The notes below the pieces were generated by a model that saw only the letters and a list, made by a program, of their open reading frames with translations, ran no database searches and was not told the DNA's origin. A stretch of DNA of 64,000 nt, taken from IMG/VR virus record IMGVR_UViG_3300047472_000309, positions 1 through 64,000 of that record; one strand, 5' to 3'. Below, in pieces: positions 9,632 through 62,481 of this stretch. The translations under genes and the position numbers were made by a program. How positions within the stretch are numbered: the stretch's first letter is position 1; every line of letters starts with the position of its first letter.

Positions 9632-9670
9632 CGGCATAAGGCCCGAGGGTTTCCCTCGGGCTCTATGACG
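9632..9670. repeat. CGGCATA-hairpin-TATGACG intergenic palindrome (probable bidirectional terminator)
   Basis: CGGCATAAGGCCCGAGGGTTTCCCTCGGGCTCTATGACG between convergent genes. Confidence 0.8.
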
Positions 9671-9679
9671 CTGAAACGT

Positions 9680-9961
9680 CTACTTCGTACACCGAGTAAT
9701 GACCCCGCGCTTCTTGCGCTCTTGAACTGCCAAACGCAAAACATCCACGCCCACAATCTTCTTGCAATACAACTGCTGTCCCGAGTAGGTGGCGGCGATA
9801 AATCCATCATCGCCTGCGTAAACGATTTTGGACAGGTACCCGTCGCGTACCAGGGTGTTTACGGCGAGTTTGTCCTCGACCTCGTCTTTATGCAAAGGAC
9901 CTTCCTCGACCATTTTCACCATGATCGCGATGTGACTGGTCTCCAACTGTGTTGCGGACAT
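9680..9961 (-). CDS. Hypothetical protein (possible winged helix)
   Basis: Likely start MSATQLE; the track extends it to 10030. Confidence 0.6.
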   Translation of the reverse strand: MSATQLETSHIAIMVKMVEEGPLHKDEVEDKLAVNTLVRDGYLSKIVYAGDDGFIAATYSGQQLYCKKIVGVDVLRLAVQERKKRGVITRCTK

Positions 9962-10196
9962 TATAACCCCAAAAGTAGCGTATTGTTTCCTTTTCTCGAG
10001 TGGCCCGAAACCCCACTCATAACGATGCACTATTTAACGGCATATGGGGTCGATCACCAACCTCGCCCGGTACAGGACGCGGTCAGTGATCTTTTGCGCC
10101 CCTCTCCAATTAACAGTGAGAGGAGCGCTCGCCCGTTCAGCTCAATAAGGGTAAGGGGTGACGACACTAAGCTGACGTGAATGTCCAGCCTACAAC

Positions 10197-12326
10197 TTAG
10201 TGTGAGTCTGACACCAAACGTGTCAATTTGTCGTTGGACAGATAAATGCCCAACGTTTCGAGGATAATGTAAAACACGCGCGTAGCATCCGCAACGATCT
10301 TACGCACCCCGGCCACCTGGAGGATCTCAGTCGGAATCCCCTTAGTCTGGAGATTCTGTTCCGGCAATTGCACGGAGCCCACATAGCGCTTACCCATTCG
10401 CTTCATGTACGCTTCCATGCGCCCTGCCAGTTCACGATCCTCAAGCGATTCCAACCACTCACGGGTCTTGGTCGGTGTGTCCAGCTCGGTGGCAATCTTG
10501 ACACACGTGTACGGTACAGGGGGGGCGATACCATACTTGGGACCAAATACCTCGTTCCACATTACGTACTGCTGATACGGTGATTCTTCCGCCGACTTCG
10601 CGTACGAATCGGGCGTTTTGATCTGACCCATCCGGAAGAACTGATAGCCACCTTCGCCAATCGCCGTAAAGATCTGGCGCTCGATGTCAGCAATCGTTTT
10701 CAGGATGTCGTGAATCTTGATCTTCTCGCCCTTTAGCACCGAGTTCATGATAAAGAGCATCATCTTCTCGGCTTCCTTAATCACAAAGCGTGGCGCATTC
10801 GACGCCTTCAAGTGCACGCCCTTGATTTCCTTCTTGTACTCCTTGAAGAGGTTGCCTTCCTGGCAGCCAATCAAGGCGAAGTAGTGCTTGGCCACCTGGG
10901 TCGCGACAAACACGTCGAACTTGAATTCGTTCTTCATGGCGACTTTGTGGATGTACTTCTCCACAATCCCAAAGTTCGCACTCATGCGCGCCAACACGTG
11001 AATGATAGTCTGCGCTGCCAGGTACACCATCGAGGCCGCTACCGCATTACACTTCTCATCAAAACCGAGCCAGCCCTGATGCCAGAGCACCCAGTCTTGC
11101 ACGGTAAAGATAGTCGAGTCCGTATCCGACGTAATCGCCGAACGACGAATCGAGTCCGGGAAAAACGCGAGAGAAGCAGGTACGTTGGTCGTCACCCAGA
11201 AGGCCGCGATCAGGTCCCGATACTCTTCCCCCACGTCGCCGATGTTCTTGGCTGTCGAGGCGAGAATACCGCGCGCCTCACCGACGATTTCATGCATCTG
11301 CAAGCCCTTGGTGTAGCGCTCACAGATTTGGGCTGCCAGGTGAACGTGTTCTTCTTGCACCGTCTTCAAGATGCTGTCAGGCTCCGGATGCGGCACTTCC
11401 ACCATCATCGACAACTTGCTGATGAAGGTCCGCACCACCTCGTCATTAAAGCGCATCAGGTGGTACAAGTCCCCCGTGTAGACAAAGGCAGAGCGCTGCT
11501 CGGGTGAGAGCGTCTTCACCAGGTCATACACCTTCTTCATCTTGAACTTGTCGCGCACATAGAAGTTGGTCGAGTACATGATGCATTCCATCGTCTCATC
11601 GACCGACGGATGACGAATGCCAAACTTGCGCATCGCCGCAGCTTGCGCTGCATAGTCCGTGTGGTTGATAATCGAGATGATATTCTGCATGCAGATCTCG
11701 ATCGACCAGTAATGGCGATTGCCCGAGAGGAACTTCTCGTTATTCGCATTGCCAAAGCCCGAGGTCGAGCGACAGTTCGAGGTGAGCGTCGAGTGGGCGG
11801 TCTTGTTGTACAGCGGCGTCGAAGGACTGACGTGCGCACCCGAGATCGAGTTATTCGCCAGCTTCTTATTGGTCTGCTCATTGTCCTTGATCTGCATCAG
11901 GACGACGTCGCCTTCCATTTCCGCTTTGAACTTGGCCTTCTTCGCCACCCCCCGTGCCTTCACGTTGCCCTCGATGTAATCAACGAGCGGTGACTGCTTC
12001 ACATCGGGATGCAAATACGTGGTAAGCGTCGGGGCAATGAGTTCTTTGTTACGGATCGAATCATTCAGGTAGGCTTGTAGCGTACCTTCCATCTGGACCC
12101 GGTCACCGTTTTCTTGGCGCTCCAGGTAGACGATCTTCGGGTCCTTGAATTCGAACTGTCCGCCAGGACGCATCTCTGTTTTCACAAAGGTGGTGCAGTC
12201 CTCGATCGGTGCCCCCGTCATTTGATGCAAATAGGTCGCGCAGTCCTGGACATAATAGCCCAGTACATTTAGATCGCGCTTGTACTGGGAAGGCGCCAGT
12301 ACAAATGGGTTGTTCGCTTCTGACAC
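10197..12326 (-). CDS. Family B DNA polymerase, polymerase-domain half (phiKZ gp50-like)
   Basis: Motif B KKLANNSISG, motif C SDTDS, KHY and IKGV motifs; no N-terminal exonuclease domain, consistent with the split polymerase of phiKZ-like phages. Confidence 0.92.
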   Translation of the reverse strand: MSEANNPFVLAPSQYKRDLNVLGYYVQDCATYLHQMTGAPIEDCTTFVKTEMRPGGQFEFKDPKIVYLERQENGDRVQMEGTLQAYLNDSIRNKELIAPTLTTYLHPDVKQSPLVDYIEGNVKARGVAKKAKFKAEMEGDVVLMQIKDNEQTNKKLANNSISGAHVSPSTPLYNKTAHSTLTSNCRSTSGFGNANNEKFLSGNRHYWSIEICMQNIISIINHTDYAAQAAAMRKFGIRHPSVDETMECIMYSTNFYVRDKFKMKKVYDLVKTLSPEQRSAFVYTGDLYHLMRFNDEVVRTFISKLSMMVEVPHPEPDSILKTVQEEHVHLAAQICERYTKGLQMHEIVGEARGILASTAKNIGDVGEEYRDLIAAFWVTTNVPASLAFFPDSIRRSAITSDTDSTIFTVQDWVLWHQGWLGFDEKCNAVAASMVYLAAQTIIHVLARMSANFGIVEKYIHKVAMKNEFKFDVFVATQVAKHYFALIGCQEGNLFKEYKKEIKGVHLKASNAPRFVIKEAEKMMLFIMNSVLKGEKIKIHDILKTIADIERQIFTAIGEGGYQFFRMGQIKTPDSYAKSAEESPYQQYVMWNEVFGPKYGIAPPVPYTCVKIATELDTPTKTREWLESLEDRELAGRMEAYMKRMGKRYVGSVQLPEQNLQTKGIPTEILQVAGVRKIVADATRVFYIILETLGIYLSNDKLTRLVSDSH

Positions 12327-12389
12327 TTTGTTTTACTCCTTGTCGACCTACATGATCAAGGCGCCCAATAAAAACGAATCGACGGCATA

Positions 12390-12846
12390 AAAAGGAAAAA
12401 AGGGCGAGGAGCGGTTTCGGGCCGCCACCTCGCCTAAATACAGGTCGTTACAAGTACCGAAAAGGAAAACCAGTCACTGAACATGCCCGAGCGATTCGGA
12501 GCCACAGAGACTCTACTACCACTACCACTTCAACCAAAATCGAGGTAGACAGGGGCCAGCTTACTCTTAATCCACGCGATCGACCAACTTCCACAGGAGA
12601 CTCCTATATTCGCCAAAGAGCGCTTGCGGAGGCGCAGAGCAGCGATAGGAGTAGGATCGATGTACGAGGAAACGCCGGTGCCAGGGGAAACAAGGAGGAA
12701 ACCCCAGCAGCGTGAATAAGCCAGCCCCGCGTCTAGGCATACGGCGCGGTAGCCCGCGGGAGGGCTCGCGCGAGAGTCCTTACCGGCACCAGTCAGGAGG
12801 AGGCCTGATGTCGATGAGGGTACAGGCTTGCCGGGCCTTTCTCTTC
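12390..12846 (+). ncRNA. Candidate structured RNA with GGA-rich loops
   Basis: No ORF of 60 aa or more. At least six stems whose mismatches are G-U on the + strand; about 16 GGA versus 4 TCC; ends in hairpin plus TTTCTCTT. Confidence 0.55.
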
Positions 12847-16771: not shown

Positions 16772-16837
16772 GGCGGCTCCTTATACACAGTATCCAGCGG
16801 CTACGTTTGTTTTGACTATTTGTGTAACTGCGGCATA

Positions 16838-17246
16838 AAAAAATAATCAGTCCCTTTTGCACCCTCCTACTGGAAGGCATAAAAGGGACTCACCTCGTCC
16901 GATGCTCACCCAAACAGCGACCCGTAAAACGGACTGTGGGATTGTTGCGATCGGAACTGAGGTGGTCTGGACATCTCAAGATGCGAGCCAAGAGTTAGGC
17001 CCTATCGCTCATCCTTACCACGACCCATGGGTCTAGTAAACGATTGCCTCGGGTACTCCCTTGAAAACTGTCGCACTTATTGCCTCCTGCTCACCGGGGG
17101 TGGCAGGCCATTACTCACGGAATGTAAAAGACTGCCTAGCCCCTAAATGCACCCCCTGCGCCTGATGCGCGGTTCGGCTGGTATGGGACTAAGAGTCTGC
17201 GCATGGCCAAATCATCGGTCCGAATCAACGGGCCAAGCGCATCGCC
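16838..17246 (-). ncRNA. Candidate structured RNA or long 3' trailer downstream of phuZ
   Basis: No ORF of 60 aa or more. Consecutive long helices, then an AGTCCCTTTT/AAAAGGGACT hairpin and U-run on the - strand. Confidence 0.45.
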
Positions 17247-19013: not shown

Positions 19014-19079
19014 GGTAATGCTCCTGAGAATAGACGAGATAGAATAGGTTGTCGAAGCTTCTTGCTTCAACTCAAGGAC

Positions 19080-19108
19080 GTAATATAGGTCTGAAATTGT
19101 TTTCAATC
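19080..19108 (-). promoter_or_regulatory. Early promoter
   Basis: GATTGAAAACAATTTCAGACCTATATTAC on the - strand. Confidence 0.8.
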
Positions 19109-19158
19109 GACTTTTAACACGCGATCCTATGTAGATTCTTTTTTAGCGGAGGCCAAGA

Positions 19159-19964: not shown

Positions 19965-20002
19965 CGGTCATAGCGGGCAGCCCCAGGGCTGCCCGTATGC
20001 CG
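19965..20002. repeat. CATA-hairpin-TATGCCG intergenic palindrome
   Basis: CGGTCATAGCGGGCAGCCCCAGGGCTGCCCGTATGCCG between convergent genes. Confidence 0.75.
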
Positions 20003-22884: not shown

Positions 22885-22984
22885 GCTCCAAGAGATGAAA
22901 AGAGGGATGTAAAAACTGAGATTATTTAAACGGCACACTGGCTAGGGGTTGCCCCCTAGCCGCTATGTCGTTCTGTCACTTGCC

Positions 22985-23852: not shown

Positions 23853-23879
23853 CACGTCACTCCGGCATAAAGGCCTGGG

Positions 23880-24095
23880 TCACCCCAGGCTCCTAGCGCG
23901 CTCCATGAGTCCGCAATTACACGGAGCGTTATAGCCGTGGATGGCCGAGAAGCTATCCTCGACACAGGTAGTCTGTTTGCCATCACGCATGATCCAGACC
24001 ATACCGTCTCGGGGTTGGGTGTGTTGCTCTTCTTGTTCGATACTCTCGTGAATCGCCTTGAAGTTAGCGAGGATATGTTTAAAGCGTTGTGGCAT
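23880..24095 (-). CDS. Early small hypothetical protein
   Basis: 71 aa, below a promoter; C/H residues near the C-terminus. Confidence 0.55.
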   Translation of the reverse strand: MPQRFKHILANFKAIHESIEQEEQHTQPRDGMVWIMRDGKQTTCVEDSFSAIHGYNAPCNCGLMERARSLG

Positions 24096-24185: not shown

Positions 24186-24203
24186 CACGGATCGACGGCA
24201 TAA

Positions 24204-24798
24204 ACGCCAGGCTCTCTGCCCGGCGAGGAAGATCACTTTGTAATTAAATATTCTATTCTTACAGAGTATGACTCCAGGGAGTATTCCTTTCTAGGGAATA
24301 ATAAAGAGAGGGGCTCCGCCCCTCTCTACGCTTAATTCTCTTCCTCCGCTTCGCTCCGCGTCGCCTCCGCTCCTTGACACATATCTAAGTTCCTACACAG
24401 TATTTTTTTACTTTATGCTTATAAATCAAGTACTTAGCTTCTAAACCCGATATTAACATATCGGGAGAGGGGCTTAGTCCCCCTCTCCCTTTTTTAAAAA
24501 GTTTAGACCGGGGTTTGTCAACCTAGAGAGTGAGCGCGTAGCGCTAGGGAAAGGAACAAAGGCACGAGCGCAGCGACAGAGATGTTTGGATAGGTATTGG
24601 ATGGTATTGTTGATGAATGACACCGCATGGTCGAAAACCCGCCCAGCGTTGCAAACCATTCTTAGGGGCGCGGCGGGCGGCGGCTTTTTATCGTGTTCCC
24701 CTATCTTGTTATGCACCGCGCGCAGCAGGATCTTTTATCCTGTAGATAGCAATACTGTGAATCTCCAATTCCGTTCCTACTCCCTAAGGAAAGAACCC
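24204..24798. other. AT-rich, palindrome-dense non-coding region at a strand switch (possible replication origin)
   Basis: No credible ORF; several GC hairpins within AT-rich DNA; GAGCGAAGCG and GAGCGCAGCG motifs. Confidence 0.4.
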
Positions 24799-25875: not shown

Positions 25876-25978
25876 TCTCATCCCTGGAACGGATGGTGTA
25901 AACGGCGGGGCTTCGGCCCCGCCTTTATGCCGTTGATCCTAATTCTGTGTATCGTTGCCCTATCTGAGAGGATGCTAA

Positions 25979-27658: not shown

Positions 27659-27815
27659 CGCGTATGGGGGAGGCTTCGGCCTCCCTCTATGCCGCGCATC
27701 TGTTGCTTATCTTGTTATGAGACGTATTATCCAGTTTAAGCTGGTTTCTACGGGTCATCCCCGGTGAGACTATGATCTCAAACTGGCTGATCAATTAACG
27801 TAAACGGGTGACAAA

Positions 27816-30099: not shown

Positions 30100-30139
30100 C
30101 GGCATAGAGCCCAGGGGGAAACCCCTGGGCCTTATGACG
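30100..30139. repeat. CGGCATA-hairpin-TATGACG palindrome
   Basis: CGGCATAGAGCCCAGGGGGAAACCCCTGGGCCTTATGACG between convergent genes. Confidence 0.8.
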
Positions 30140-38867: not shown

Positions 38868-38916
38868 CGGCATAGAGCCCAAGAGACCCGCAAAGGTCTC
38901 TTGGGCTTTTATGCTG
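38868..38916. repeat. CGGCATA-hairpin-TATG palindrome / bidirectional terminator
   Basis: AGCCCAAGAGACC-CGCAAA-GGTCTCTTGGGCT stem between convergent genes. Confidence 0.8.
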
Positions 38917-44362: not shown

Positions 44363-44418
44363 ATGCGGATCAACGGCATAAGCCCCAGGGTTTCCCCTGG
44401 GGCTCGCTTACGGTGGTG

Positions 44419-52265: not shown

Positions 52266-53890
52266 GAATCGTAACCTGTCAGATTGTGGAACACCAAGGA
52301 CACGGTCGAGACTTCGATACTGGACATGAAGGAGCCGTCGGTACCGACGTAGGCGCGCTTCTTACTCAGGTGTGCCTTGACTTCCGCGATGGATTCGTCC
52401 GAGTACGTGACGTTACCCGAAGCGGTATCGCCGTCAAAGTCCGCGCCCAGTTTGCCAAGCTTGGCTGAGTGCGGCACCAGCGAGTTGATAAACGCACCGC
52501 CCGTAATCGGGAACTGATACGCCACCGGCGCATCCAGTCGTAGTTGCCACTGCTCATCGAGCTCCTTGCGAACCTCAGCCTTAATCGTCGTCTTCACATA
52601 GGCGAGCGACGGATAGATCGAGCCCACCCCGGTCACCGGGTAACGCGTCACAAAGAGCGGCAAGCCATTGATGGCCTGGAAGGTCGACAGATAGAGCAGC
52701 TCACAAAAGGTGAGCGGCGTCACATCTTTGCGACTGCGCTCAATGGGCACATCACCAATGTCCTGGAAGATCTTGTAGGTCCCGTCCGGGCCCTTGTAAA
52801 TGAGACCGAGGTAATAGCCTTCAATCTCCAGCGGCTTATGGCGCAGGTCCTCGTCTCCAAACGACGTGATCACCTTCTCGATGCCTTCGTTGGTCATCCA
52901 GCGATCGTAGCTTTGCGTCTTGAGTGTGACTTCGACTGGGCGCAGCGTCTTCTTGTCAATCAGCTTTACCGGCCGACCCACTTCAAAGAACACCTTGGAG
53001 AGAAAGCCGTTGCGAATGTTGTACATCGCAATCGGACGCGCCGCTTTCAACATCTGGTACAGGCCGATCACGGTGTTATTAAAGCCCACCGCGTCGGGTG
53101 CCCCCAGATAGGGACTGGACGTATCCATCGCCGTAATCACGTTTCGCGTGCCGTCCTGAATCCGCCGACTGGCCCACTTGCCCATCAGCAGCTTCTTCTT
53201 GCCCTGCACCATGTTTTCCAGCATGTCGTACAACTGGTTAAAGGTGAGCTGCAAGTTGTAGCGTGCGGTGTTGATCACTTCCGGTGCAGTCTTGACCGAC
53301 GCTTCGGAGATGGTGTTGGAGATCGCCAGCAGCTTGCGGTAAAAGGTGTTGATTTCATCCATCTGCACCCGACCGCCATCGAGCTCCACGTCACGCATCC
53401 CCGCAGGCATCACAATCACTTTGCTGGTGAGCGCCACGCTCTGGAACTTCTTCAAGAGCGACACATTCATTTCCCGTGTCACACTCTTGGTGTCACCGAA
53501 TTCGATGAGCTTCCAGTATTCCAGAAAGAATGCGTAGCCGGTACGGCCGGTAATTGAATTGCTGCGCTCAAAGTCTTTGGTTTCCGGATTCCACACCGCG
53601 TACTCAGTGCCTGCCATAATCGCAGCATAGAGGCGCTTGAGCTGGGCGAGTGCCCGATAGATCACCGGATGGAACACCGGGGCCTTGATGTCAACAAACG
53701 AAAAGCGCTGACTCCGGCGCTCATCCCCGACTTTGCCGAAGATGCTCACCGAGAAGAGTCCGCCTTCGTCGAAGTTGTGGGTCGCGCCATCGAAGATGTC
53801 TTGCTTCGTAACAGGTTTCACACCCACGAGCTTTTTCTCCGTGAGTTCAAGGATACTCACGTTAAATGGGACTTCGCTTTTCTGGGGCAT
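52262..53890 (-). CDS. Virion RNA polymerase beta'-like catalytic subunit (phiKZ gp180-like)
   Basis: GLFS..IFG, TRNVIT, TRYP and GADFDGD motifs; ATGA overlap with the beta gene. Confidence 0.95.
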   Translation of the reverse strand: MPQKSEVPFNVSILELTEKKLVGVKPVTKQDIFDGATHNFDEGGLFSVSIFGKVGDERRSQRFSFVDIKAPVFHPVIYRALAQLKRLYAAIMAGTEYAVWNPETKDFERSNSITGRTGYAFFLEYWKLIEFGDTKSVTREMNVSLLKKFQSVALTSKVIVMPAGMRDVELDGGRVQMDEINTFYRKLLAISNTISEASVKTAPEVINTARYNLQLTFNQLYDMLENMVQGKKKLLMGKWASRRIQDGTRNVITAMDTSSPYLGAPDAVGFNNTVIGLYQMLKAARPIAMYNIRNGFLSKVFFEVGRPVKLIDKKTLRPVEVTLKTQSYDRWMTNEGIEKVITSFGDEDLRHKPLEIEGYYLGLIYKGPDGTYKIFQDIGDVPIERSRKDVTPLTFCELLYLSTFQAINGLPLFVTRYPVTGVGSIYPSLAYVKTTIKAEVRKELDEQWQLRLDAPVAYQFPITGGAFINSLVPHSAKLGKLGADFDGDTASGNVTYSDESIAEVKAHLSKKRAYVGTDGSFMSSIEVSTVSLVFHNLTGYDS

Positions 53891-53967: not shown

Positions 53968-56900
53968 ATGGCCAAGCAACAAAAATTCACGTTGAACGAT
54001 TTCCAGTTCGACAAGAACCTTGACGTGCCTGATTTCGATTTCGATCTCAAGCCGCCGAAGGATAACCGCAAGCCGGTTACCAAAGTCGCTGCGGGCCTGA
54101 AAGAAGGCATCAGCCTGTCGGCGAAGAACTCCGAGTTTATCAAGGGCGTCATTGAGAAAGCACTGCCTCGGGGATACGGCTCCGCGTATGATCTCGCCGA
54201 GAAATCGTTCGGATCGATAAAAAGTCTATACGATGATACGACCAAGGAAATCCGGCCGTTCATGAACGACTTGAAGCGCACGACGGCACGCTTGCTCCCG
54301 AAGGTGGAGCAGGCGATGCCGGACAAGCTCAAGAAGCAAGTGAAGGACTGGACTGAGACGGCGGACGCCAAACCGGGCAGCTCGAACTATGATCCTCGCG
54401 AAGCCGAGATCAGTGCGATGCTTGCAGGCTTCGCCCAGGTTCAGTCCGAACTCCAATACAAACAAACCACTGAATCAGACACCAAGGATCGACTCCGTGA
54501 AGGCCTCGAACAAGTCCGCCATCGGGACAAGCTTAAGCAGATGGACTCGCTGCGCGTTGGCATTGCTCAGCTTGTGGATTACCAGTCCAACGTTACCGCT
54601 AACTACCATCGCAAGTCGCTCGAGCTCCAGTACCGCCATTACTTCGTTGCTGTAGACGCACTGGAAGAAACCAAGCGCAGCAACGCAGAGATGCGCCTGC
54701 TCTTGCAAAGCGTGGTGCACAATACGGCGCTACCCGAGCAAGCCAAGCTCAAGGCTTCGGACACCTTCAAGGACATGGCCAAGCAACAGGCCATGAAGCT
54801 GATTGGCGGCACCATTCTTGGGCGCGGCCAGGAGTTCTTGAACAATCTCACCGGGAACCTGAAGAAGAACGCCTTGCGCACGGTGAAGGGCGGGCTGGGT
54901 CATGGTCGCTCAGGGATGGACATGTTAAACGGCGTCCTGGATGCTGATGACATGGCGCGTGCAATGGGCATGCAAACCGATCCGTATCATGCTGGCGGGA
55001 TGGTGGCCGGTGCGTTTGGCACAGGCATCATCGGGCAGTGGCTCGCTAAGAAGATGGCGCCGCACTTGCAAAAGATGCCAGGTGTAAAGAAGTTCGGTAA
55101 CAAATTGCAGTACGGCGTTGAGAACGTGCCGCAGATGCTCGGCGAATGGGCGCGCTCGAACAAGCACGAGAATGGTGGCATCACCGACGGTCTGGTACGC
55201 TTCTTGAAGATGAACGTCAGGAGCTCGCAGAAGATGCAAACCGGTCTGCAAAAGGATACCGTTGAAGGCATGGGGGAGCCGTCCTACTTTAGCCGTCAGT
55301 CGGCAAAGTCGTTGAACGAGATCATTCCTGGCTACCTCGCCCGGATTCTGCGTGAGTTGCAAGTCACCCGCACCGGGGACCCGAACGTCGAGATGACGCA
55401 TTATGACTACACCAAGAACAAGTTCGACACGCAAAGCAATGTGCGTACGAACGCGTTTAAGTCCCTGGTCAAAGACAACGAGCGCAAGTGGACCACCGAG
55501 TCGATCGATAGCCTGATCGATGAAGTTACCACTAAGACGGGCAAAACCCTCACCCCGGAACAGAAGAAGATTCTCGGTAGTCAGCTCTTGCGTAACAACG
55601 TCAAGGGTCGCCTAGGTGGGGAAGAGGTGCTCGGTAACCGGCGCCGTTATGATGGTGATGCCGCACCGCACGCTGATGCGTTTGCCGATCTGTTTAAGAC
55701 GTACTTCCGCAACGATCACGATAACGAGCGCAAGCACTCGTTTGCCAATGCGTACAATGCATTTGGTCAGTATGCGTCCGCCTCGCGTGAAAAGGTCCAG
55801 CATTTTTCCAATCTGGGCATGAACGACTTCTTGAATGAGGCGGGCCTGCTTAATGATGACGAAGATGGCGTGAAGCTCGAGCAGTTCTTTGACTACTATT
55901 ACGGCAAGGACTTTAACCCGGCCGCGGGGAGTACTGCGAATGGTTTTCGTCCCGCTCAGGCTGGGGCAGCCGCGGCTGCTGTGGGTCCGCGTCGTCGTCG
56001 GCGGCGCGGCAATGCAGGCAGTATTGGTCGCGCAAATCGCGGTGGGGTGCATCAAGCCCTGTCTCAATTGGCAGCGGGTCCGGTCCCGTCCTTTGCAACG
56101 CCTGGTCTGATTACGCCGAGCTTTGTACCGACGACCGCTAATGCGGGTGCCTATAGCCCGCAACCGAACGCCGCCGTCGGCACGCCCAAGTATCGTCAGC
56201 AGTTGGCGAACTACTTGCAAAAGCTGGGAGTACCGGTTCAGCAAGTCAATGCGCTGGTGGAGCAAACTGTTTCTGCCATGGGAGCAACGGCGCACGGTGC
56301 AGTACAAGGTGCGGCAGGTTTGCAAGCCGCGGGTACGCAACGCGCTGGCGGGTTCTTTAGCAATGCACGAGATCACGCGCGTGAGTTTGCTAACCGGACG
56401 GCTTCGGGTGCACGCGCGCTGCATGAGAATGCCAAGAACCACATCGAGACGTTGCTCGAGAAGCTCTCTGAAGGTGTAGGGTCCATTAGCGATGGGATCA
56501 AGGCCATCCAGGAACGTTTCGCCGAAGCGCTGCCAGTGATGGTGGTCGGTAACGCCGCAGATGGTTCGATCCCGACGGGTGCCGCAGGTACGGGTCGCAA
56601 GGTACGCTGGTGGAACAAGTCCATCAAGGACGGTGTCAAGAGCCTCGCCTCGGGCGCATGGGGCGGCATGAAGAGTGCAGGCAAGCTGGGTAACTGGTTG
56701 GTCGGCAGCAGCTTCGGTGGTCTCTTCGGCACGGCCAAGGCGGTGGGCGGTATGGCAACCGGTCTCGCAGGCAAGGTGATTGACAAGGCCCGCGGCTTTA
56801 AGGATGTGTATTCAGAAGAGACAGGTCCGCGTAAGGTCCTGCTCTATGCGGCACGTCTGAAGGCTGGTGAATACTTCGATGTCAAGACGGGCAAACCCGT

Positions 56901-59900
56901 CAAGACCTGGCGAGATATTCAAGGCGCAGTGGCCGATGCCTCAGGCATTGTCATGACCGAGGAGCAAGCGTCGACCGCCTATGTGCGAGAAGGGCTCGCT
57001 AAGAAGGCCCTAAGGGGGCTGGGTGCCGGTGTCAAGGTCGCCAGCAAGCTCGGTAGCTTCCTCGGTGGCAACCTCTTGGGTGGCCCTCTGGCGGGCTACA
57101 AAGCGATCGCTAAACTCGGTGAGCTGGCCATCAAAGGCGCGCTGGGTTATGCCAATGGTCCGCAAGATGTGTACGTATTCGACAAGGATCATCCGAAGCG
57201 ACTGCGTAAGGCTCTGGACGCGAAGACCATGCGCGCAGGTGGCTATCACTCGGCAGTCAATGACAAAGCCATCAAGAGTCCGAAAGACATTGATGGCGAA
57301 GTCTACAACTACAAGGGTGTTACGGTACTCGACGAAGAGGAATTCAAGCGCGGTCTCTATGACAAGAACGGCAACCCGCTCAAACACGGGGTGGCACGAC
57401 TTCTGTCAGGCGCCACGAAGATTCTCGGCGGTGGGTTCGGCGCGCTTAAGTGGTTGGCTGGGGGTGTGAACCAAGGTATCGGTCATGCGTTCGGCCTGGG
57501 CAAGGGCATGTTCAGTGGACTGGGTTCCCTCTTTGGCAAGACGGGGATTTTCTTTGGTGGTGGCAAGAAGTTGATGTCCGCTGTGGAAGAGATTCGTGAC
57601 TTGCTCAAGGACCGGCTACCTGAACGGCACAGAATCCGCAAGGGTTCGATCGAGGACCAGCACAAGTCGCGTAAGGAACAGCTCGAAGAGGAATGGAAGA
57701 AGCACCTGGGTCAGAACGGCCAAGGTGATGACAGCCAGAAGAAGGGCGGTATTCTCAGCCTGCTCAGTGGTCTGTTCAAGCGCAAGAAAAAGAAGGACGA
57801 TGACGAAGACGACTCCAAGGGTGGTCTGGTTGATGGGGTCGAGTCCGCAGTCGAACAAACGATTGCTGATAAGATCCTCGGCAAGATTCCTGGAGGCAAG
57901 CTCCTGCGCAAGATTCCGGGCCTAGGACGACTCTTCGGTAAGGGCGGCGCGGGTGCAGCAGCCGGTGCCGCTGAAAACATCGTGGGCGGCGCGGCTAAGC
58001 AGGGTCTCGGTACCCGCATCATGGGCGGTCTGAAGTGGGGCAAAGGCCTGGGTGCCGGTATGGCGCTCACGGGTGCCTCGGCGCTGGCCAATGCCACGGG
58101 CCACGATACCATTGGAAAGGGGTTGGGTTATGCAGGTGATGCTGCGACTGGGTGGTCTCTTGCTTCTGGGGCTGCTGGTCTACTCGGTGTTGAAGGTGGA
58201 GCATTGGGCCTTGCAGGCGCTGCAGGCGGGACACTCCTTACTGGACTTGGGGCGGTGCTTGCTTCGCCTGTGCTCTTGCCTGCTCTCGGTATTGCGGCTG
58301 CTGGGGCTGCAGTGTACAGCGGCTATCGGCTCCTGACCCGTAACAAGCTCGATGCGCTCTCAAAGATCCGTTACGCTCAGTATGGTTGGAAGCCCGAGGA
58401 CGACGGCAATGTGCACAAGGTGTTTGCGTTGGAAAACGCACTGATGCCGGGTGTCACGTACGTCGGTGGTCAGGCGCAGATTGATCCCAAGAAGGTGGAC
58501 ATTAAGAGCGCAGTCGAAGGCCTGGGTGTCGATCTGAAGGATAAGGATCAGGTGCAGAACTTTGCCACCTGGTACGTGCGTCGCTTTAAGCCGGTCTTTA
58601 TCACCCACCTGACCATCTTGAATAACATCAAGAAGGGTACGGCGTTGTCGGATGCCAACGACAAGCTGTCCTCAGCGGAGAAGAAGACTTTCCTGCAAGG
58701 GATTCGCATGCCTGCCGACCCGTATAACTCGATGGTCTCGCCGATTCCGGGCGAGAAGCAATTGAGTGCAGGGGCTGACGACGTGAAGGCCGTGATGGAC
58801 GAGGTGCAAGCCGCCAACGATAAGGAGGTCGAGAAAGATAAGGACAAGAAGACCAACGACAAGGCGGACAAAGCCAAGGACGAGGCTAAGCACGACGCAG
58901 CGACGAAGGGCGATAACAAGCCTGAGCCGAGCTGGATGGATAATCTTAAGTCAGGGATCAGTAACGCCTGGGATAAGACCAAACAGTTTGCAGGCAATGC
59001 GTGGGACGCGACGAAGAGTGCTGCCAGCTCAGTAGGTTCGGCGGCGTCGAGTCTCATCTCGGGTGCAGGCGATGCCCTGAAGTCCGGCTACCAAGCGGCG
59101 AAGGGAGCAGCGGGTAAGATTGGTGCCACCCTCACGGCTTCGGCCTCGGCTATTAAGGGTGCGTTGATTGCGGCGATGAAAACCGCAGGCATGAGTGACC
59201 CGACCGAGCAAGCGATGTTCATGGCACAGATGGACCACGAGAGTGGCGGCTTTAAGTCCCTCTCGGAAAATCTGAACTATCGACCCTCGGTGCTCGCGAG
59301 TCTCTTTAAGTCGCACTTTAATGGCGAGGGGGATGCCGCTAATGTGGCTGCGGCCGGTCCGCAAGCGATTGCGAATCGGATCTACGGTGGTCGCATGGGG
59401 AACACGGGGCCTGATGATGGCTGGAACTATCGGGGTCGCGGGGTCGTCCAGTTGACGGGTAAAGCCAACTACGCCAAGTACGGCAAGATGACTGGTCTGG
59501 ATCTGGTGAACAATCCGGATCTCGCCTCTGACCCGGCCAATGCCGCTAAGATTGCGCTGGCGTACTGGAAGGATCGAGTGTCTTCAGCGGCTGCGAAAGC
59601 AGGCGATGTGCTCTCGGTCACCAAGGCGATCAACGGTGGCACGAACGGCCTGAGCGATCGGCAGGCGAAGTTCCAGGCTTACCTCGGTCAGGCGCAGCAA
59701 GGCCAGTTGGGTGGCAAACCGGACCCGAATGCCAAGGCAGGGGAGGCGGGTACCCAAGTCGCCTCGACCGGTGGTGCTCCGGCCACGGGTAGTGCAGGTG
59801 GTGCGGGCGCAGCGGGTGCGACAGGCGCAGCAGCAGGCGGGATCATCAAGGTCGCGGATCAGACTCCTGGTCCGGCTCCGGCACTGAAGTCAACCCCGGC

Positions 59901-60282
59901 AACTGCTCCGGATGCAGCGCCGGTGGATAATGGTGCGAGCGCAGCAGTTAGCGCCCTGCCTGACTCCATCAATAGCCAAACCGCGGCAGCCATGGGGGGC
60001 TTCCAGAATCGCAGTAAGGATCTGGCAGCCCAAAGCCAAGCCCAGTCGCAAGATCTGGCCAAAACACTCGGCCCGGTCTCTGATGTGCTCAAGCAATCGC
60101 TCGATGTCCAAAAGCAGATGCTGACGGCGTTGCAACAACTCGTGGGTTTTGCCGGTAAGCAAGGGAGCAATTCTCAAGCGAACGCGAAGACTCCGACGGG
60201 GACACTCTCGCCTGATGCTATGCAAAGGAAGACACCGCAGCCGATGACGTCTGCTCCGGTTTCCATGTCCAAAGTGGCTTAA
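53968..60282 (+). CDS. Tail-associated lysozyme / tape-measure-like protein (phiKZ gp181-like) with GH19 domain
   Basis: About 2100 aa; G/A-rich hydrophobic segments; two DVY...G.Y...DI.G repeats; FMAQMDHESG, YRGRG..QLTG..NY and INGG.NG GH19 motifs. Confidence 0.9.
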   Translation: MAKQQKFTLNDFQFDKNLDVPDFDFDLKPPKDNRKPVTKVAAGLKEGISLSAKNSEFIKGVIEKALPRGYGSAYDLAEKSFGSIKSLYDDTTKEIRPFMNDLKRTTARLLPKVEQAMPDKLKKQVKDWTETADAKPGSSNYDPREAEISAMLAGFAQVQSELQYKQTTESDTKDRLREGLEQVRHRDKLKQMDSLRVGIAQLVDYQSNVTANYHRKSLELQYRHYFVAVDALEETKRSNAEMRLLLQSVVHNTALPEQAKLKASDTFKDMAKQQAMKLIGGTILGRGQEFLNNLTGNLKKNALRTVKGGLGHGRSGMDMLNGVLDADDMARAMGMQTDPYHAGGMVAGAFGTGIIGQWLAKKMAPHLQKMPGVKKFGNKLQYGVENVPQMLGEWARSNKHENGGITDGLVRFLKMNVRSSQKMQTGLQKDTVEGMGEPSYFSRQSAKSLNEIIPGYLARILRELQVTRTGDPNVEMTHYDYTKNKFDTQSNVRTNAFKSLVKDNERKWTTESIDSLIDEVTTKTGKTLTPEQKKILGSQLLRNNVKGRLGGEEVLGNRRRYDGDAAPHADAFADLFKTYFRNDHDNERKHSFANAYNAFGQYASASREKVQHFSNLGMNDFLNEAGLLNDDEDGVKLEQFFDYYYGKDFNPAAGSTANGFRPAQAGAAAAAVGPRRRRRRGNAGSIGRANRGGVHQALSQLAAGPVPSFATPGLITPSFVPTTANAGAYSPQPNAAVGTPKYRQQLANYLQKLGVPVQQVNALVEQTVSAMGATAHGAVQGAAGLQAAGTQRAGGFFSNARDHAREFANRTASGARALHENAKNHIETLLEKLSEGVGSISDGIKAIQERFAEALPVMVVGNAADGSIPTGAAGTGRKVRWWNKSIKDGVKSLASGAWGGMKSAGKLGNWLVGSSFGGLFGTAKAVGGMATGLAGKVIDKARGFKDVYSEETGPRKVLLYAARLKAGEYFDVKTGKPVKTWRDIQGAVADASGIVMTEEQASTAYVREGLAKKALRGLGAGVKVASKLGSFLGGNLLGGPLAGYKAIAKLGELAIKGALGYANGPQDVYVFDKDHPKRLRKALDAKTMRAGGYHSAVNDKAIKSPKDIDGEVYNYKGVTVLDEEEFKRGLYDKNGNPLKHGVARLLSGATKILGGGFGALKWLAGGVNQGIGHAFGLGKGMFSGLGSLFGKTGIFFGGGKKLMSAVEEIRDLLKDRLPERHRIRKGSIEDQHKSRKEQLEEEWKKHLGQNGQGDDSQKKGGILSLLSGLFKRKKKKDDDEDDSKGGLVDGVESAVEQTIADKILGKIPGGKLLRKIPGLGRLFGKGGAGAAAGAAENIVGGAAKQGLGTRIMGGLKWGKGLGAGMALTGASALANATGHDTIGKGLGYAGDAATGWSLASGAAGLLGVEGGALGLAGAAGGTLLTGLGAVLASPVLLPALGIAAAGAAVYSGYRLLTRNKLDALSKIRYAQYGWKPEDDGNVHKVFALENALMPGVTYVGGQAQIDPKKVDIKSAVEGLGVDLKDKDQVQNFATWYVRRFKPVFITHLTILNNIKKGTALSDANDKLSSAEKKTFLQGIRMPADPYNSMVSPIPGEKQLSAGADDVKAVMDEVQAANDKEVEKDKDKKTNDKADKAKDEAKHDAATKGDNKPEPSWMDNLKSGISNAWDKTKQFAGNAWDATKSAASSVGSAASSLISGAGDALKSGYQAAKGAAGKIGATLTASASAIKGALIAAMKTAGMSDPTEQAMFMAQMDHESGGFKSLSENLNYRPSVLASLFKSHFNGEGDAANVAAAGPQAIANRIYGGRMGNTGPDDGWNYRGRGVVQLTGKANYAKYGKMTGLDLVNNPDLASDPANAAKIALAYWKDRVSSAAAKAGDVLSVTKAINGGTNGLSDRQAKFQAYLGQAQQGQLGGKPDPNAKAGEAGTQVASTGGAPATGSAGGAGAAGATGAAAGGIIKVADQTPGPAPALKSTPATAPDAAPVDNGASAAVSALPDSINSQTAAAMGGFQNRSKDLAAQSQAQSQDLAKTLGPVSDVLKQSLDVQKQMLTALQQLVGFAGKQGSNSQANAKTPTGTLSPDAMQRKTPQPMTSAPVSMSKVA

Positions 60283-60285: not shown

Positions 60286-60314
60286 GAGGGGAGCTTCGGC
60301 TCCCCTCTTTATTT
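60286..60314 (+). terminator. Intrinsic terminator
   Basis: GAGGGGAGC-TTCG-GCTCCCCTC-TTTATTT. Confidence 0.85.
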
Positions 60315-60327
60315 CGTAGGAGCAGCC

Positions 60328-62439
60328 GTGGCTTCAACAGTCTCGCTGAATAATCTTGAAAAAGACGCCTCGTGGGTACGGCAGTCTTTTCTGGTGAACC
60401 TGTCGCACCTGCAACCGGTGGATCAGCAAAACCGGATCTTCACGCCGGTGAGTCTGGACTTTCAGGACACCCGCCCAGGCGGGAGTTTGTGTATCAACCC
60501 GCCCCCGCAGTTTACCCGCAACGCGGATCTGAAACCCCGCGCGCCCAACGGGAGCTGGAACCCCAACCAGGTCAATCGGGCCGGGAATACTGGTTATGGT
60601 CGCTATTACGGGGAAGCCATCGCCGCGAACTCGCAGATCATCAATATCCGTTGTGGTCTGCCCTCGTTCAATTCGTTGACGACCTTCTTCACGGGCTTCT
60701 ATAACACCAGCGCAGGTACCCTGGCACGCACCGGACGAGCACCCTCAGCGTTTTATGAGCTGGGCCGCGCCGCAGGCTTTGTAGTCTCGATCCTGTCGTG
60801 GAAGTTGCTGGCCGTGACGCTCCTGGGTAATGCAGCACGCTTCTTCTTGCAAAAGCCCTCGAGCAAGTTCTACTACTCGAAGCCTGCCATGCCACTTTAC
60901 TGGAACGCGGTGCAAACCATCGTCAACCAGATTGCGGTGAACATGGGGATTGTGCCACGGATTGGCGGCACCTCGCTTGCCCAACAACTGGGGGAAGGCT
61001 ATCAGTTCGATGCTAAAGCACAAACGCAGCTGCATCAGCTCTTGCCCGACATCATCAACGAAGGCGGTTCGATCAACGTCTACGCGATGGCCAACCGGGC
61101 GCAGCGCCTGGCGACCCTGCATCAGAACAACCTGAAGCAGGCGTTTAATGCCGATAACCTCGATCTAACGAGCGCGGTGCAGAAGGCCTATAGCCAGTCC
61201 TTGAAAGATAACGGTGGCACGGGTTGGAGTGATTACCTGAAGAAGTGGCTGGGTTCGTCTCAGGCCGTTCCGCAAGCCGCCGGGGGTGGGGGTGAGAGTT
61301 CGACCACGGAGTCGCTCAATAACGACGACAATGGCACGACCGCTCCGAATCAGGCTTACGATGCAGGCTTCTTCGAATTCCTTGGCTCAGAGATCAATGA
61401 CGGCTCGGCCTTTGTGGGCTTTCGGGTCAATGCAACTGGTCCAGTGGGTGAGTCGTTTTCCAGTCAGGCGCAGGAATCGGAAATCGCGCAGAAGATCAAT
61501 AGCATCTCCTCGCAGGCCCGCTCGGCTGAGTTTGATCTGGCCAATGGTAACCTGGGGGGTGGGGCGATCGGCGGCATGATCACCAGCGCCTTCGGTGCGG
61601 TGGGCAATTTCATCAAAGGCGGGCTGGACTCCTTGCATTTGTCGGGTCTGGCCGCTCTGGGCGGTGCAGCGTTTGTGGACATCCCGCGTTCCTGGCAGTC
61701 GTCCGCCGCGTCCTTGCCCCGTATGAGCTACACCATCAACTTGGTGAGCCCGTATGGCAATCGCGTCTCGCAGCTGCTTAATCTCTACGTGCCGCTGGCG
61801 ATGCTGCTCGCCATGACCTTGCCGATTGCAACCGGTAAGCAGTCCTACACCAGTCCGTTCCTGTGTGAGATCTTTGACCGGGGTCGTTGCCAGTCGCGTT
61901 TGTCCATGGTGGAGAGCTTGTCAATTACCCGCGGTACGGGCAACACAGGCTTTAACAACAAGGGCCACGCGATGGGCATTGAAGTGAGCATTACGTTCAT
62001 GGACATGTCCACGGTGCTCGCGATGCCGATCAGTCAGGGCTTCTCCTCCAATGCCATGGCAGCAGGCAGTGAGATTGGCGCCGTCGCAGGTGGGGTGGTG
62101 GGTGCAGGCGGGGGTCCGCTGACGGCGATCGGGGGTGCAGCACTCGGCGGGGCAGTCGGCGGCGCACTCGGTGCGGGTGCCGATGCCTTGAACAATGCCG
62201 CGCAAACCATCGGCTCGATGTTCGACGATGACAATACCTTCACGGATTACATGGCGGTGTTGTCAGGCATGGGTCTTACGGACCAGATCTACTCGATGAA
62301 CAAGTTCAAGCTTAACTTGACTCGCGCCATGACGAGCTGGAAGACCTGGTATAGCACGGCGCATTTTGCCAGCTTTGCCGGAGATACCTTGCCGGGCAGT
62401 TTAGTTTCCGCGATCTTTGGTCGCACCGTCCGTAACTAA
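60328..62439 (+). CDS. Baseplate / tail-tip structural protein (phiKZ gp182-like)
   Basis: 703 aa; NPPPQFT..AD, SPYGN and SYTSPF motifs; follows the gp181-like gene. Confidence 0.8.
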   Translation: MASTVSLNNLEKDASWVRQSFLVNLSHLQPVDQQNRIFTPVSLDFQDTRPGGSLCINPPPQFTRNADLKPRAPNGSWNPNQVNRAGNTGYGRYYGEAIAANSQIINIRCGLPSFNSLTTFFTGFYNTSAGTLARTGRAPSAFYELGRAAGFVVSILSWKLLAVTLLGNAARFFLQKPSSKFYYSKPAMPLYWNAVQTIVNQIAVNMGIVPRIGGTSLAQQLGEGYQFDAKAQTQLHQLLPDIINEGGSINVYAMANRAQRLATLHQNNLKQAFNADNLDLTSAVQKAYSQSLKDNGGTGWSDYLKKWLGSSQAVPQAAGGGGESSTTESLNNDDNGTTAPNQAYDAGFFEFLGSEINDGSAFVGFRVNATGPVGESFSSQAQESEIAQKINSISSQARSAEFDLANGNLGGGAIGGMITSAFGAVGNFIKGGLDSLHLSGLAALGGAAFVDIPRSWQSSAASLPRMSYTINLVSPYGNRVSQLLNLYVPLAMLLAMTLPIATGKQSYTSPFLCEIFDRGRCQSRLSMVESLSITRGTGNTGFNNKGHAMGIEVSITFMDMSTVLAMPISQGFSSNAMAAGSEIGAVAGGVVGAGGGPLTAIGGAALGGAVGGALGAGADALNNAAQTIGSMFDDDNTFTDYMAVLSGMGLTDQIYSMNKFKLNLTRAMTSWKTWYSTAHFASFAGDTLPGSLVSAIFGRTVRN

Positions 62440-62443
62440 TCGA

Positions 62444-62481
62444 CGGCATAGAGGCCAGGGGAAACCCTGGCCCTTATGACG
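62444..62481. repeat. CGGCATA-hairpin-TATGACG palindrome
   Basis: CGGCATAGAGGCCAGGGGAAACCCTGGCCCTTATGACG between convergent genes. Confidence 0.8.

What the first reader, a model, noticed from the sequence alone, without database searches (positions are those of the whole stretch)
9632..62481. Dispersed CGGCATA-[variable hairpin]-TATG(C/A)CG element, about 14 copies
Seen: copies at about 9632, 10038, 12383, 16831, 19965, 22931, 23863, 24196, 25903, 27666, 30100, 38868, 44374 and 62444. The flanking heptamers are conserved while stems vary, and several copies have only one arm. Many lack U-tracts. Two-armed copies lie mostly between convergent genes. Three one-armed copies lie directly upstream of early promoters. 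Known: TATG is the phiKZ late promoter core. Inference: a phage-RNAP-specific termination or processing signal, a protein-binding site for nucleoid organisation or mRNA export, or outward-facing promoters producing antisense RNA.
Basis: partly seen in the sequence, partly recalled or inferred. Interest (0 to 1): 0.65.

Follow-up and report, generated by a model that had tools for sequence, protein, structure and literature searches.

The report
PhiKZ-type terminator hairpins with TATG box
The repeated element is most likely the transcription stop signal of nucleus-forming (phiKZ-like) jumbo phages, a GC-rich RNA hairpin followed by a conserved TATG(C/A)CG box instead of the usual run of U; this signal is already described in phiKZ and is found here in a new high-GC relative.

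Summary
The window is the first 64 kb of a 310,654-bp, 56% GC chimallivirus genome assembled from rhizosphere metagenomes. The true unit is directional: a GC-rich hairpin, 0-3 nt, TATG, C/A, C, G, then pyrimidines. Two-armed copies carry the box on both strands. Genome-wide, 80 of 824 TATG lie just 3' of a strict hairpin, against about 1% for control tetramers. Of 63 heptamers, 53 are intergenic. The units follow gene ends (61 of 354 slots against 15 of 354), not gene starts. They fill 27 of 36 convergent slots and 3 of 36 divergent slots. One-armed copies have UUCG-type loops on the box strand (16 to 2), so the hairpin acts as RNA. In phage FLC9 the stems have turned over, but 40 of 50 arms keep their side. 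The motif matches the published phiKZ terminator motif (hairpin + yTTATKYYGT), defined on 61 mapped transcript 3' ends. I found the same box in all seven chimalliviruses tested (37-56% GC) and in neither control jumbo phage. Verdict: unidirectional and bidirectional phiKZ-type terminators, a new member of a known kind. How the box works is unknown. It has the same four bases as the late-promoter start site.

The parts
9632..9670 (.). Two-armed unit. The box TATGCCG reads on the - strand (9638 to 9632), the stem-loop is 9641-9661, and the box TATGACG reads on the + strand (9664-9670). It lies between the + gene 8485-9621 and a weak - ORF at 9680-9895.
   Evidence: Fold energy is -24.7 (+) and -23.9 (-) kcal/mol.
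10038..10044 (-). Heptamer with only a weak, distant upstream structure, downstream of the DNA polymerase gene (10197-12326, -). It is an atypical copy and its status is uncertain.
12383..12435 (-). Composite unit. On the - strand, the hairpin 12402-12435 is followed by a T-run (12390-12401) and then TATGCCG (12389 to 12383).
   Evidence: -21.9 kcal/mol.
16831..16890 (-). Composite unit. On the - strand, the long hairpin 16849-16890 is followed by a T-run and then TATGCCG (16837 to 16831).
   Evidence: -29.1 kcal/mol.
19965..20002 (.). Two-armed unit between convergent genes (19216-19962 on + and 20013-20612 on -). TATGACC reads on the - strand (19972 to 19966), the stem-loop is 19974-19995, and TATGCCG reads on the + strand (19996-20002).
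   Evidence: The syntenic FLC9 hairpin has a different stem and both arms.
22931..22970 (.). Stem-loop 22940-22961 with TATGTCG on the + strand (22964-22970) and a degenerate TGTGCCG on the - strand (22937 to 22931). It lies between two - strand ORFs.
23863..23890 (-). One-armed unit: stem-loop 23873-23890, then TATGCCG (23869 to 23863). An early promoter 8-mer follows at 23824-23831 on the - strand.
24196..24225 (-). One-armed unit: stem-loop 24205-24225, then TATGCCG (24202 to 24196). An early promoter 8-mer follows at 24157-24164 on the - strand.
24454..24495 (.). Stem-loop 24463-24489 with TATGTTA on the - strand (24460 to 24454) and an ordinary T-run on the + strand (24490-24495).
25904..25932 (+). 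One-armed unit after the + gene 24799-25875: stem-loop 25904-25923 with a UUCG loop, then TATGCCG at 25926-25932. The next + gene starts at 25979.
   Evidence: FLC9 keeps the box with a different stem.
27666..27694 (+). One-armed unit after the + ORF 27332-27658: stem-loop 27666-27687 with a UUCG loop, then TATGCCG at 27688-27694.
30100..30139 (.). Two-armed unit between the terminase gene (27918-30083, +) and a virion protein gene (30157-31893, -). The stem-loop is 30109-30130, with TATGCCG on the - strand and TATGACG on the + strand.
   Evidence: FLC9 keeps both arms with a changed stem.
38868..38916 (.). Two-armed unit between convergent genes (37920-38840 on + and 38925-39158 on -). The stem-loop is 38876-38907, with TATGCCG on the - strand and TATGCTG on the + strand (38910-38916).
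   Evidence: -34.7 kcal/mol.
44374..44404 (-). One-armed unit after the - gene 44419-45219: stem-loop 44381-44404, then TATGCCG (44380 to 44374). An early promoter 8-mer follows at 44334-44341 on the - strand.
60286..60316 (+). Variant unit after the 2104-aa + gene (53968-60282): stem-loop 60286-60307 with a UUCG loop, followed by TTTATTTCG. This is the TTATT form that the phiKZ motif also allows.
   Evidence: motif from PMC10914365.
62444..62481 (.). Two-armed unit between convergent genes (60328-62439 on + and 62501-64027 on -). The stem-loop is 62453-62472, with TATGCCG on the - strand and TATGACG on the + strand.
   Evidence: FLC9 keeps both arms with a changed stem.

Best explanation
These are the transcription terminators (3'-end-forming signals) typical of phiKZ-like, nucleus-forming jumbo phages.

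**Proposed mechanism**
- Each functional unit is read on one strand. The nascent RNA folds into a GC-rich hairpin, often capped by a UUCG or GNRA loop.
- The hairpin is followed after 0-3 nt by the box UAUG-(C/A)-C-G-y, which stands where ordinary intrinsic terminators have a run of U.
- A hairpin with the box on both strands is a bidirectional terminator for two convergent genes.
- A hairpin with one box ends a co-directional transcription unit.
- The copies 'upstream of early promoters' are simply the terminators of the preceding early unit, as in phiKZ.

**Shown here:** the anatomy, the direction, the position at gene ends, RNA-level selection on the loops, conservation of box and side while stems turn over, and identity with the phiKZ terminator motif.

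**Inferred by homology:** that transcripts actually end there. This was mapped only in phiKZ and 201phi2-1.

**Inferred only:**
- The box acts as a sequence-specific pause or release signal for the phage's own multisubunit RNA polymerases, replacing the weak rU:dA hybrid.
- It offers two pyrimidine-G steps (U-G and C-G) about 5-6 and 8-9 nt after the stem, near the place where hairpin-driven release normally occurs.
For: - **Hairpin link.** 80 of 824 TATG lie within 5 nt 3' of a strict hairpin, against 0.2-1.5% for unrelated control tetramers; TTTT reaches only 34 of 1511. TATG is the most enriched 4-mer in hairpin 3' flanks (75 against 5.7 expected).
- **Consensus.** The logo is TATG, C/A, C, G, T/C, T/C, with the box starting 0-3 nt after the stem.
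- **Gene ends, not gene starts.** With a gene end upstream, 61 of 354 slots carry a unit, against 15 of 354 without (odds ratio 4.7, p 2e-8). With a gene start downstream it is 37 against 39 of 354 (p 0.9). Convergent slots carry 27 of 36, divergent slots 3 of 36 (p 8e-9).
- **Direction.** 46 of 53 intergenic heptamers have a stable fold upstream, and 3 of 53 have one downstream.
- **RNA-level selection.** In one-armed units the loops read UUCG or UACG on the box strand 16 times and on the other strand 2 times.
- **Conservation.** FLC9 shows about 73% nucleotide identity over the aligned 63% of the genome. At syntenic FLC9 hairpins, 40 of 50 arms are kept on the same side, 18 of 22 absent arms stay absent, and 1 of 36 stems is identical.
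- **Published motif.** phiKZ has 133 mapped termination sites. 61 share a stem-loop followed by yTTATKYYGT (PMC10914365). A very similar motif occurs in 59 terminators of 201phi2-1, and eight tested terminators worked in vivo (PMC11512511).
- **My own scan of phiKZ.** It gives the same box, TATG, T/C, T/C, G, T, at the same offset.
- **Family-wide.** The box is also found in LucasX, RsoM3USA, Ea35-70 and Eowyn (7- to 12-fold enrichment). It is not enriched in AR9 or RSL1.
- **Phage type.** The genome encodes chimallin, virion RNA polymerase subunits and a GP123 homologue.
Against: - No RNA data exist for this phage, which is a metagenome assembly with no RNA runs. Transcript ends are therefore not shown here.
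- Long-read 3' ends in phiKZ cannot separate termination from processing.
- 12 units face antisense between co-directional genes, and 3 lie in a divergent gap. These need unannotated genes or another role.
- My gene calls are home-made.
- The box has the same four bases as the late-promoter start site, so a promoter role for some copies is not excluded.
- About 15 units have an unexplained T-run after the box.
- The tested 201phi2-1 terminators worked in uninfected cells with the host polymerase. Dependence on a phage polymerase is therefore not shown.
Confidence: 0.8

Rival explanations
1. The boxes are late promoters (TATG with the G as start site) that happen to sit right after terminator hairpins. 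Transcription would stop at the hairpin and restart at the box. Two-armed copies would then fire antisense RNA into both convergent genes.
For: - TATG with G as +1 is the phiKZ late promoter core, and it is necessary in vitro (PMC4666361).
- The beta-like subunit GP123 binds it (PMC12809450). The target has a GP123 homologue with 8 of 14 pocket residues identical.
- 34 units are followed by a co-directional gene 24-824 nt away, in most cases within about 170 nt.
- Between co-directional genes, TATG without a strict hairpin is about twice as common on the sense strand as on the antisense strand (94 against 46).
Against: - A downstream gene start does not raise the frequency (37 against 39 of 354 slots). 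Divergent gaps, which must hold promoters, carry 3 units in 1 of 18 gaps, whereas convergent slots carry 27 of 36.
- The heptamer hardly ever occurs without the upstream hairpin.
- phiKZ late promoters show no conservation after TATG, whereas the box has three to four more conserved positions.
- The P119L promoter oligonucleotide sequence printed in PMC7618050 shows no GC-rich hairpin upstream of its TATG.
- Some boxes lie upstream of an early promoter that already serves the next gene.
Confidence: 0.1
2. The hairpin plus box is an RNA-level 3'-UTR signal rather than a terminator. It could be a cleavage and stabilisation site for a nuclease. It could also be a tag read by an RNA-binding protein, for instance for export of mRNA from the phage nucleus.
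For: - The loops are selected at the RNA level.
- The box occurs in all seven nucleus-forming phages tested, and not in AR9 or RSL1.
- Mapped 3' ends in phiKZ cannot tell processing from termination.
Against: - The 201phi2-1 terminators reduced downstream expression in uninfected cells without phage proteins (PMC11512511).
- No candidate reader protein was identified here.
- The phylogenetic pattern is explained equally well by the phage polymerases.
Confidence: 0.08
3. The element acts as DNA: a cruciform or protein-binding palindrome for genome organisation, or a mobile REP/MITE-like repeat.
For: - It is dispersed, palindromic and intergenic, with a conserved flank.
- REP elements also pair a conserved short flank with a palindrome (my own knowledge).
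Against: - Stem sequences are not conserved between copies or between syntenic FLC9 sites.
- Loop choice is strand-specific.
- One-armed copies follow gene direction.
- The positions are syntenic rather than scattered.
- Rfam gave no match in the window.
Confidence: 0.02

Closest known systems
Conserved phiKZ terminator motif (Putzeys et al. 2024, PMC10914365) and motif A of 201phi2-1 terminators (PMC11512511)
   Same: - A GC-rich stem-loop is followed at once by y-TTAT-K-YY-G-T. The target's commonest form, c/t-TATGCCG-t, fits this degenerate consensus.
- The offset from the stem is the same.
- It is intergenic at gene ends, and bidirectional copies lie between convergent genes.
- It often sits just upstream of an early promoter.
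   Different: - In the target, the fourth base of the box is almost always G. Position 5 is C or A rather than a pyrimidine. The tail is CCG rather than U-rich YYG.
- The flank is therefore no longer U-rich (3.4 T in 9 nt, against 4.3 in phiKZ), and a canonical hairpin-plus-T-run scan does not pick these units up.
- Transcript ends are not mapped in this phage.
Canonical intrinsic (rho-independent) terminator
   Same: A stable GC-rich RNA hairpin lies a few to tens of nucleotides after the stop codon. Bidirectional forms lie between convergent genes.
   Different: - There is no U-tract: none of 75 flanks has 6 or more T in 9 nt.
- A consensus scan of window 19001-39000 found no excess of canonical terminators and none of these units.
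- A sequence-specific box takes the place of the U-tract.
phiKZ late promoter (TATG, G = +1) recognised by the non-virion RNA polymerase
   Same: The same tetranucleotide is used, and the target encodes a homologue of the subunit that binds it.
   Different: - The box needs an upstream hairpin and has extra conserved bases.
- It follows gene ends, not gene starts.
- The phiKZ late promoter P119L, as printed in PMC7618050, has no GC-rich hairpin upstream of its TATG, and phiKZ late promoters have no conserved downstream bases.
T7 class II termination or pause signal (my own knowledge)
   Same: It is a short sequence-specific signal that makes a phage polymerase pause or terminate without a U-run after a hairpin.
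   Different: The T7 signal needs no hairpin and is read by a single-subunit polymerase. There is no sequence similarity.

Membership tests
phiKZ-type conserved terminator motif | A GC-rich stem-loop | tested here: met
   Strict hairpins of 7 or more pairs with 5 or more G-C pairs. Window folds range from -15 to -35 kcal/mol.
phiKZ-type conserved terminator motif | A 3' flank of y-TTAT-K-YY-G-T directly after the stem | tested here: met
   Target logo: TATG (80 of 80 by selection), then C51/A22, C63, G57, T43/C25. The box starts 0-3 nt after the stem. The phiKZ logo made with the same script is TATG, T/C, T/C, G, T. Position 5 allows A, which departs from Y.
phiKZ-type conserved terminator motif | Lies downstream of genes on the coding strand, and is bidirectional between convergent genes | tested here: met
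   61 of 76 intergenic units have a co-directional gene end upstream. 27 of 36 convergent slots are filled.
phiKZ-type conserved terminator motif | Transcript 3' ends map to it | not testable with these tools
   No RNA run holds this genome. 3' ends were mapped only in phiKZ and 201phi2-1.
phiKZ-type conserved terminator motif | The host phage is a chimallivirus with its own multisubunit RNA polymerases | tested here: met
   Chimallin (E 1.5e-108) and RNA polymerase beta-like proteins (E 0 and 2e-201) were found. A GP123 homologue was found (E 2e-77). The early promoters resemble those of phiKZ.
Canonical intrinsic terminator | A U-rich tract directly after the hairpin | tested here: not met
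   The 9 nt after the stem hold 3.4 T on average, and 0 of 75 flanks have 6 or more. The units are not picked up by the consensus scan.
phiKZ late promoter | A TATG core | tested here: met
   The core is present in every unit by construction. Enrichment is specific to TATG: TATC and TATA stay at background.
phiKZ late promoter | Placed upstream of genes that it drives | tested here: not met
   37 of 354 slots with a gene start downstream carry a unit, against 39 of 354 without. Half of the units face the 3' end of an opposing gene.
phiKZ late promoter | Transcription starts at the G | not testable with these tools
   No RNA data are available.
REP/MITE-like repeat | A conserved palindrome sequence shared by the copies | tested here: not met
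   Stems differ between copies and between syntenic FLC9 sites; 1 of 36 is identical.

The most novel reading that the evidence does not exclude
Promoters and terminators of chimalliviruses may share one four-base code.
- The same pocket of the beta-like core subunit (GP123 in phiKZ) fixes the late transcription start by binding non-template TATG.
- That pocket would also catch a TATG that passes through the bubble of an elongating polymerase.
- On its own this would be harmless. With an RNA hairpin forming just behind, it would stall and release the enzyme.
- This would give a U-tract-independent, polymerase-encoded termination mechanism.

The box survives unchanged from 37% to 56% GC while its U-rich surroundings are lost. 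It is absent from AR9, whose related polymerase reads a different promoter. Both facts fit this idea.
Probability: 0.2. Interest if true: 0.8.

Novelty: new member of a known kind. Interest (0 to 1): 0.42.

Why it matters
**Annotation.** Standard terminator finders miss almost all transcription unit boundaries in this phage and its high-GC relatives. A hairpin-plus-TATG rule recovers about 75-80 of them, together with their direction.

**Biology.**
- The high-GC genomes separate two properties that are confounded in AT-rich phiKZ. What is conserved is the specific TATG(C/A)CG box, not U-richness.
- This makes the question of how the non-canonical phiKZ-type polymerases terminate directly testable.
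- It also raises the question of why the stop signal carries the same four bases as the late start signal.

**Engineering.** These compact bidirectional units are candidate insulators for work with jumbo phages.

Tried and rejected
- **RNA evidence.** The one search for sequencing runs found only DNA metagenomes, mostly from rhizosphere and soil, and no RNA. I therefore did not use read laying.
- **Rfam.** The window gave no match at gathering thresholds.
- **Supplementary tables.** The tables with phiKZ and 201phi2-1 start and stop coordinates are not held, and Ceyssens 2014 is not held. I could not check whether mapped late starts coincide with boxes, or where exactly the 3' ends fall.
- **First hairpin criterion.** It was too lax, with about 7% background. 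An energy-based scan timed out. Both were replaced by a strict stem rule.
- **Fixed spacing to early promoters.** Rejected: the three window copies share it, but other copies differ, and in phiKZ too the gap varies from copy to copy.
- **Arms selected to pair with each other.** Not supported. No two-armed copy has TATGCCG on both strands, and the partner is usually TATGACG, which leaves a central mismatch. The numbers are too small for a test.
- **A GP123-like pocket in the virion polymerase.** BLAST found no paralogue of GP123 in the target or in phiKZ. It stays open whether the early enzyme could read the box the same way.
Full report
**What the window is.** The window is the first 64 kb of a single 310,654-bp contig with 56% GC. 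Near-identical DNA occurs only in metagenomes, mostly from rhizosphere and soil, and no RNA run holds it. The nearest deposited genome is Burkholderia phage FLC9. It shows 79.5% nucleotide identity over one large gene and about 73% over the aligned 63% of the genome. The window encodes:
- a nuclear shell protein (chimallin, 3132-5042, - strand);
- two RNA polymerase beta-like proteins (47727-52265 and 52262-53890, - strand);
- a DNA polymerase, a terminase, a tail sheath and virion proteins.

Outside the window, at genome 108995-110629 (- strand), lies a homologue of phiKZ GP123, a beta-like subunit of the non-virion polymerase. The chimallin is 80% identical to that of FLC9 and at most about 31% identical to all others. 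The phage is therefore a phiKZ-like, nucleus-forming jumbo phage of a little-studied high-GC lineage.

**The observation.**
- CGGCATA occurs 16 times in the window, against 6.25 expected, and no shuffle reaches 16.
- All 14 listed places exist.
- The element is better described as a directional unit: a GC-rich hairpin, 0-3 nt, then TATG, C/A, C, G, T/C, T/C.
- CGGCATA is simply this box read on the other strand.
- A 'two-armed' copy has a box on both strands, and a 'one-armed' copy has it on one.

Genome-wide tests:
- 53 of 63 heptamers are intergenic, although only 11.7% of the genome is intergenic.
- 46 of 53 intergenic heptamers have a stable fold in the 40 nt upstream, and only 3 of 53 have one downstream.
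- 80 of 824 TATG lie within 5 nt of the 3' end of a strict hairpin. Control tetramers reach about 1%, and TTTT reaches 34 of 1511.
- TATG is the most enriched 4-mer in hairpin 3' flanks (75 against 5.7 expected).
- The flanks are not U-rich: the 9 nt after the stem hold 3.4 T on average, and none holds 6 or more.
- A consensus scan for ordinary terminators in window 19001-39000 found no excess over shuffles and none of these units.

**Where the units lie.** I called genes with a home-made Markov model, which gave 355 genes and 88% coding. The strands of the large window genes agree with the family matches. Each gap between genes offers two directed slots.

| Slot type | Units / slots |
|---|---|
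| Co-directional gene end upstream | 61 / 354 |
| No co-directional gene end upstream | 15 / 354 |
| Gene start downstream | 37 / 354 |
| No gene start downstream | 39 / 354 |
| Convergent | 27 / 36 (in 14 of 18 gaps) |
| Divergent | 3 / 36 (all in one gap) |

- The gene-end contrast has an odds ratio of 4.7 (p 2e-8). The gene-start contrast has p 0.9. Convergent against divergent has p 8e-9.
- The single divergent gap with units is window 23750-24800. It probably holds unannotated small genes.
- The distance from stop codon to hairpin is mostly 3-40 nt.
- The unit therefore marks gene ends, not gene starts.

**RNA or DNA.** In one-armed units the loop reads UUCG or UACG on the strand that carries the box 16 times, and on the other strand twice. 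Such loops stabilise RNA hairpins only in one orientation. The hairpin is therefore selected as RNA transcribed towards the box. This argues against a DNA-level role.

**Conservation.**
- At syntenic positions in FLC9 the hairpins are still present, but only 1 of 36 stems has the same sequence.
- 40 of 50 arms are kept on the same side, and 18 of 22 missing arms are also missing in FLC9.
- Structure and box are under selection; stem sequence is not.

**Comparison with what is known.**
- Putzeys et al. 2024 mapped 133 termination sites in phiKZ with ONT-cappable-seq. [quoted passage not shown]
- The tail yTTATKYYGT accommodates the target's commonest form, TTATGCCGT.
- A strongly similar motif occurs in 59 of 132 terminators of 201phi2-1. 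Eight terminators of that phage were active in reporter constructs in uninfected cells (PMC11512511).
- I ran my own scan on the phiKZ genome. It gave TATG 93 times against 16.3 expected, at the same offset, followed by T/C, T/C, G, T.
The early promoters of the two phages are recognisably alike. The spacing between box and promoter differs between copies in both phages, so the box is not part of the early promoter.

**Extension to other phages.**

| Phage | GC | TATG in hairpin 3' flanks (observed / expected) |
|---|---|---|
| LucasX | 55% | 114 / 9.3 |
| RsoM3USA | 52% | 37 / 5.2 |
| Ea35-70 | 50% | 55 / 4.7 |
| Eowyn | 45% | 79 / 7.3 |
| AR9 (control) | 28% | 7 / 5.8 |
| RSL1 (control) | 58% | 6 / 4.0 |

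- In the four chimalliviruses the box tail is C/T, C/T, G, T.
- AR9 has related polymerases that read a different promoter, and RSL1 is an unrelated jumbo phage. Neither shows enrichment.
- The box is thus common to all seven chimalliviruses tested, from 37% to 56% GC. It stays TATG while the surrounding U-richness is lost at high GC.
- I did not find this family-wide, GC-independent conservation stated in the papers I could search. My library is incomplete.

**Mechanism.**
- Termination or 3'-end formation is well supported by position, direction, RNA-level selection and homology with mapped phiKZ terminators. It is not shown directly for this phage.
- How the box works is inference.
- TATG with G as +1 is the phiKZ late promoter core (PMC4666361).
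- A 2026 structure shows that the beta-like subunit GP123 holds the four non-template bases in a pocket (PMC12809450).
- In the target's GP123 homologue (30% identity), 8 of the 14 named pocket residues are identical, and two aromatic ones are conservatively replaced.
- Because GP123 is a core subunit, it may also read a TATG that passes through an elongating enzyme. That could provide the pause which a U-tract otherwise gives.

Points against leaning on this idea:
- Early units, which the virion polymerase transcribes, end in the same units. I found no GP123 paralogue by BLAST.
- The 201phi2-1 terminators worked with the host polymerase.
- I give this idea about 0.2.

**Rivals.**
- The promoter reading fails as the main role for three reasons. 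Divergent gaps lack the unit. Convergent gaps are filled with it. The heptamer needs its hairpin, whereas phiKZ late promoters show no conserved bases after TATG, and P119L as printed in PMC7618050 has no GC-rich hairpin upstream.
- A restart at the G in co-directional gaps remains possible.
- A processing, stability or export tag at the RNA level cannot be excluded with sequence alone.
- DNA-level and mobile-repeat readings are contradicted.

**Verdict.** The finding is real and statistically strong. It is the phiKZ-type terminator in its unidirectional and bidirectional forms, in a new high-GC chimallivirus. That makes it a new member of a known kind. The open and interesting part is why the stop signal carries the late start tetranucleotide.

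Noticed in passing
window 5128-5135, 19080-19087, 23824-23831, 24157-24164, 44334-44341 (- strand): There are phiKZ-type early promoters: TATATTAC or TATATTCT preceded by a shared part of about 25 nt (gattcaaa..ttt..cc). They closely resemble the phiKZ early promoter set despite the 20-point difference in GC.
   Followed up: partly
window 23750-24800: About 1 kb has no convincing ORF. It holds two promoter-plus-terminator modules and two further strong hairpins (24305-24327 and 24463-24489). It may encode small early proteins or small RNAs.
   Followed up: no
window 3058-3083 (- strand) and 24463-24495 (+ strand): Ordinary hairpin-plus-U-run terminators exist but are rare: about 12 flanks genome-wide against about 75 with the box. 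One of them follows the chimallin gene.
   Followed up: partly
genome 64063, 100277, 126084, 160874, 277992, 292375; window 38874: About 15 of 76 units carry a run of 5-10 T that starts 3-12 nt after the box. That is too far from the stem to act as a normal U-tract. It is unexplained.
   Followed up: no
all two-armed units, e.g. window 9632-9670, 30100-30139, 62444-62481: No two-armed copy has TATGCCG on both strands. The partner is usually TATGACG, so the arms would pair with a central mismatch. About half of all boxes with A at position 5 belong to two-armed copies.
   Followed up: partly
genome 111500-112400 (outside the window): A cluster of four strong hairpins, several of them with boxes on both strands, lies in non-coding DNA. 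FLC9 keeps at least one of them, with both arms.
   Followed up: no
whole genome: There is a strong strand bias: 294 of 354 gene junctions are -/-. Only 18 junctions are convergent and 18 divergent.
   Followed up: no
window 562-568, 726-732, 40310-40316: Three copies of the heptamer lie inside ORFs and have no hairpin. They look like chance occurrences and are not part of the element.
   Followed up: yes
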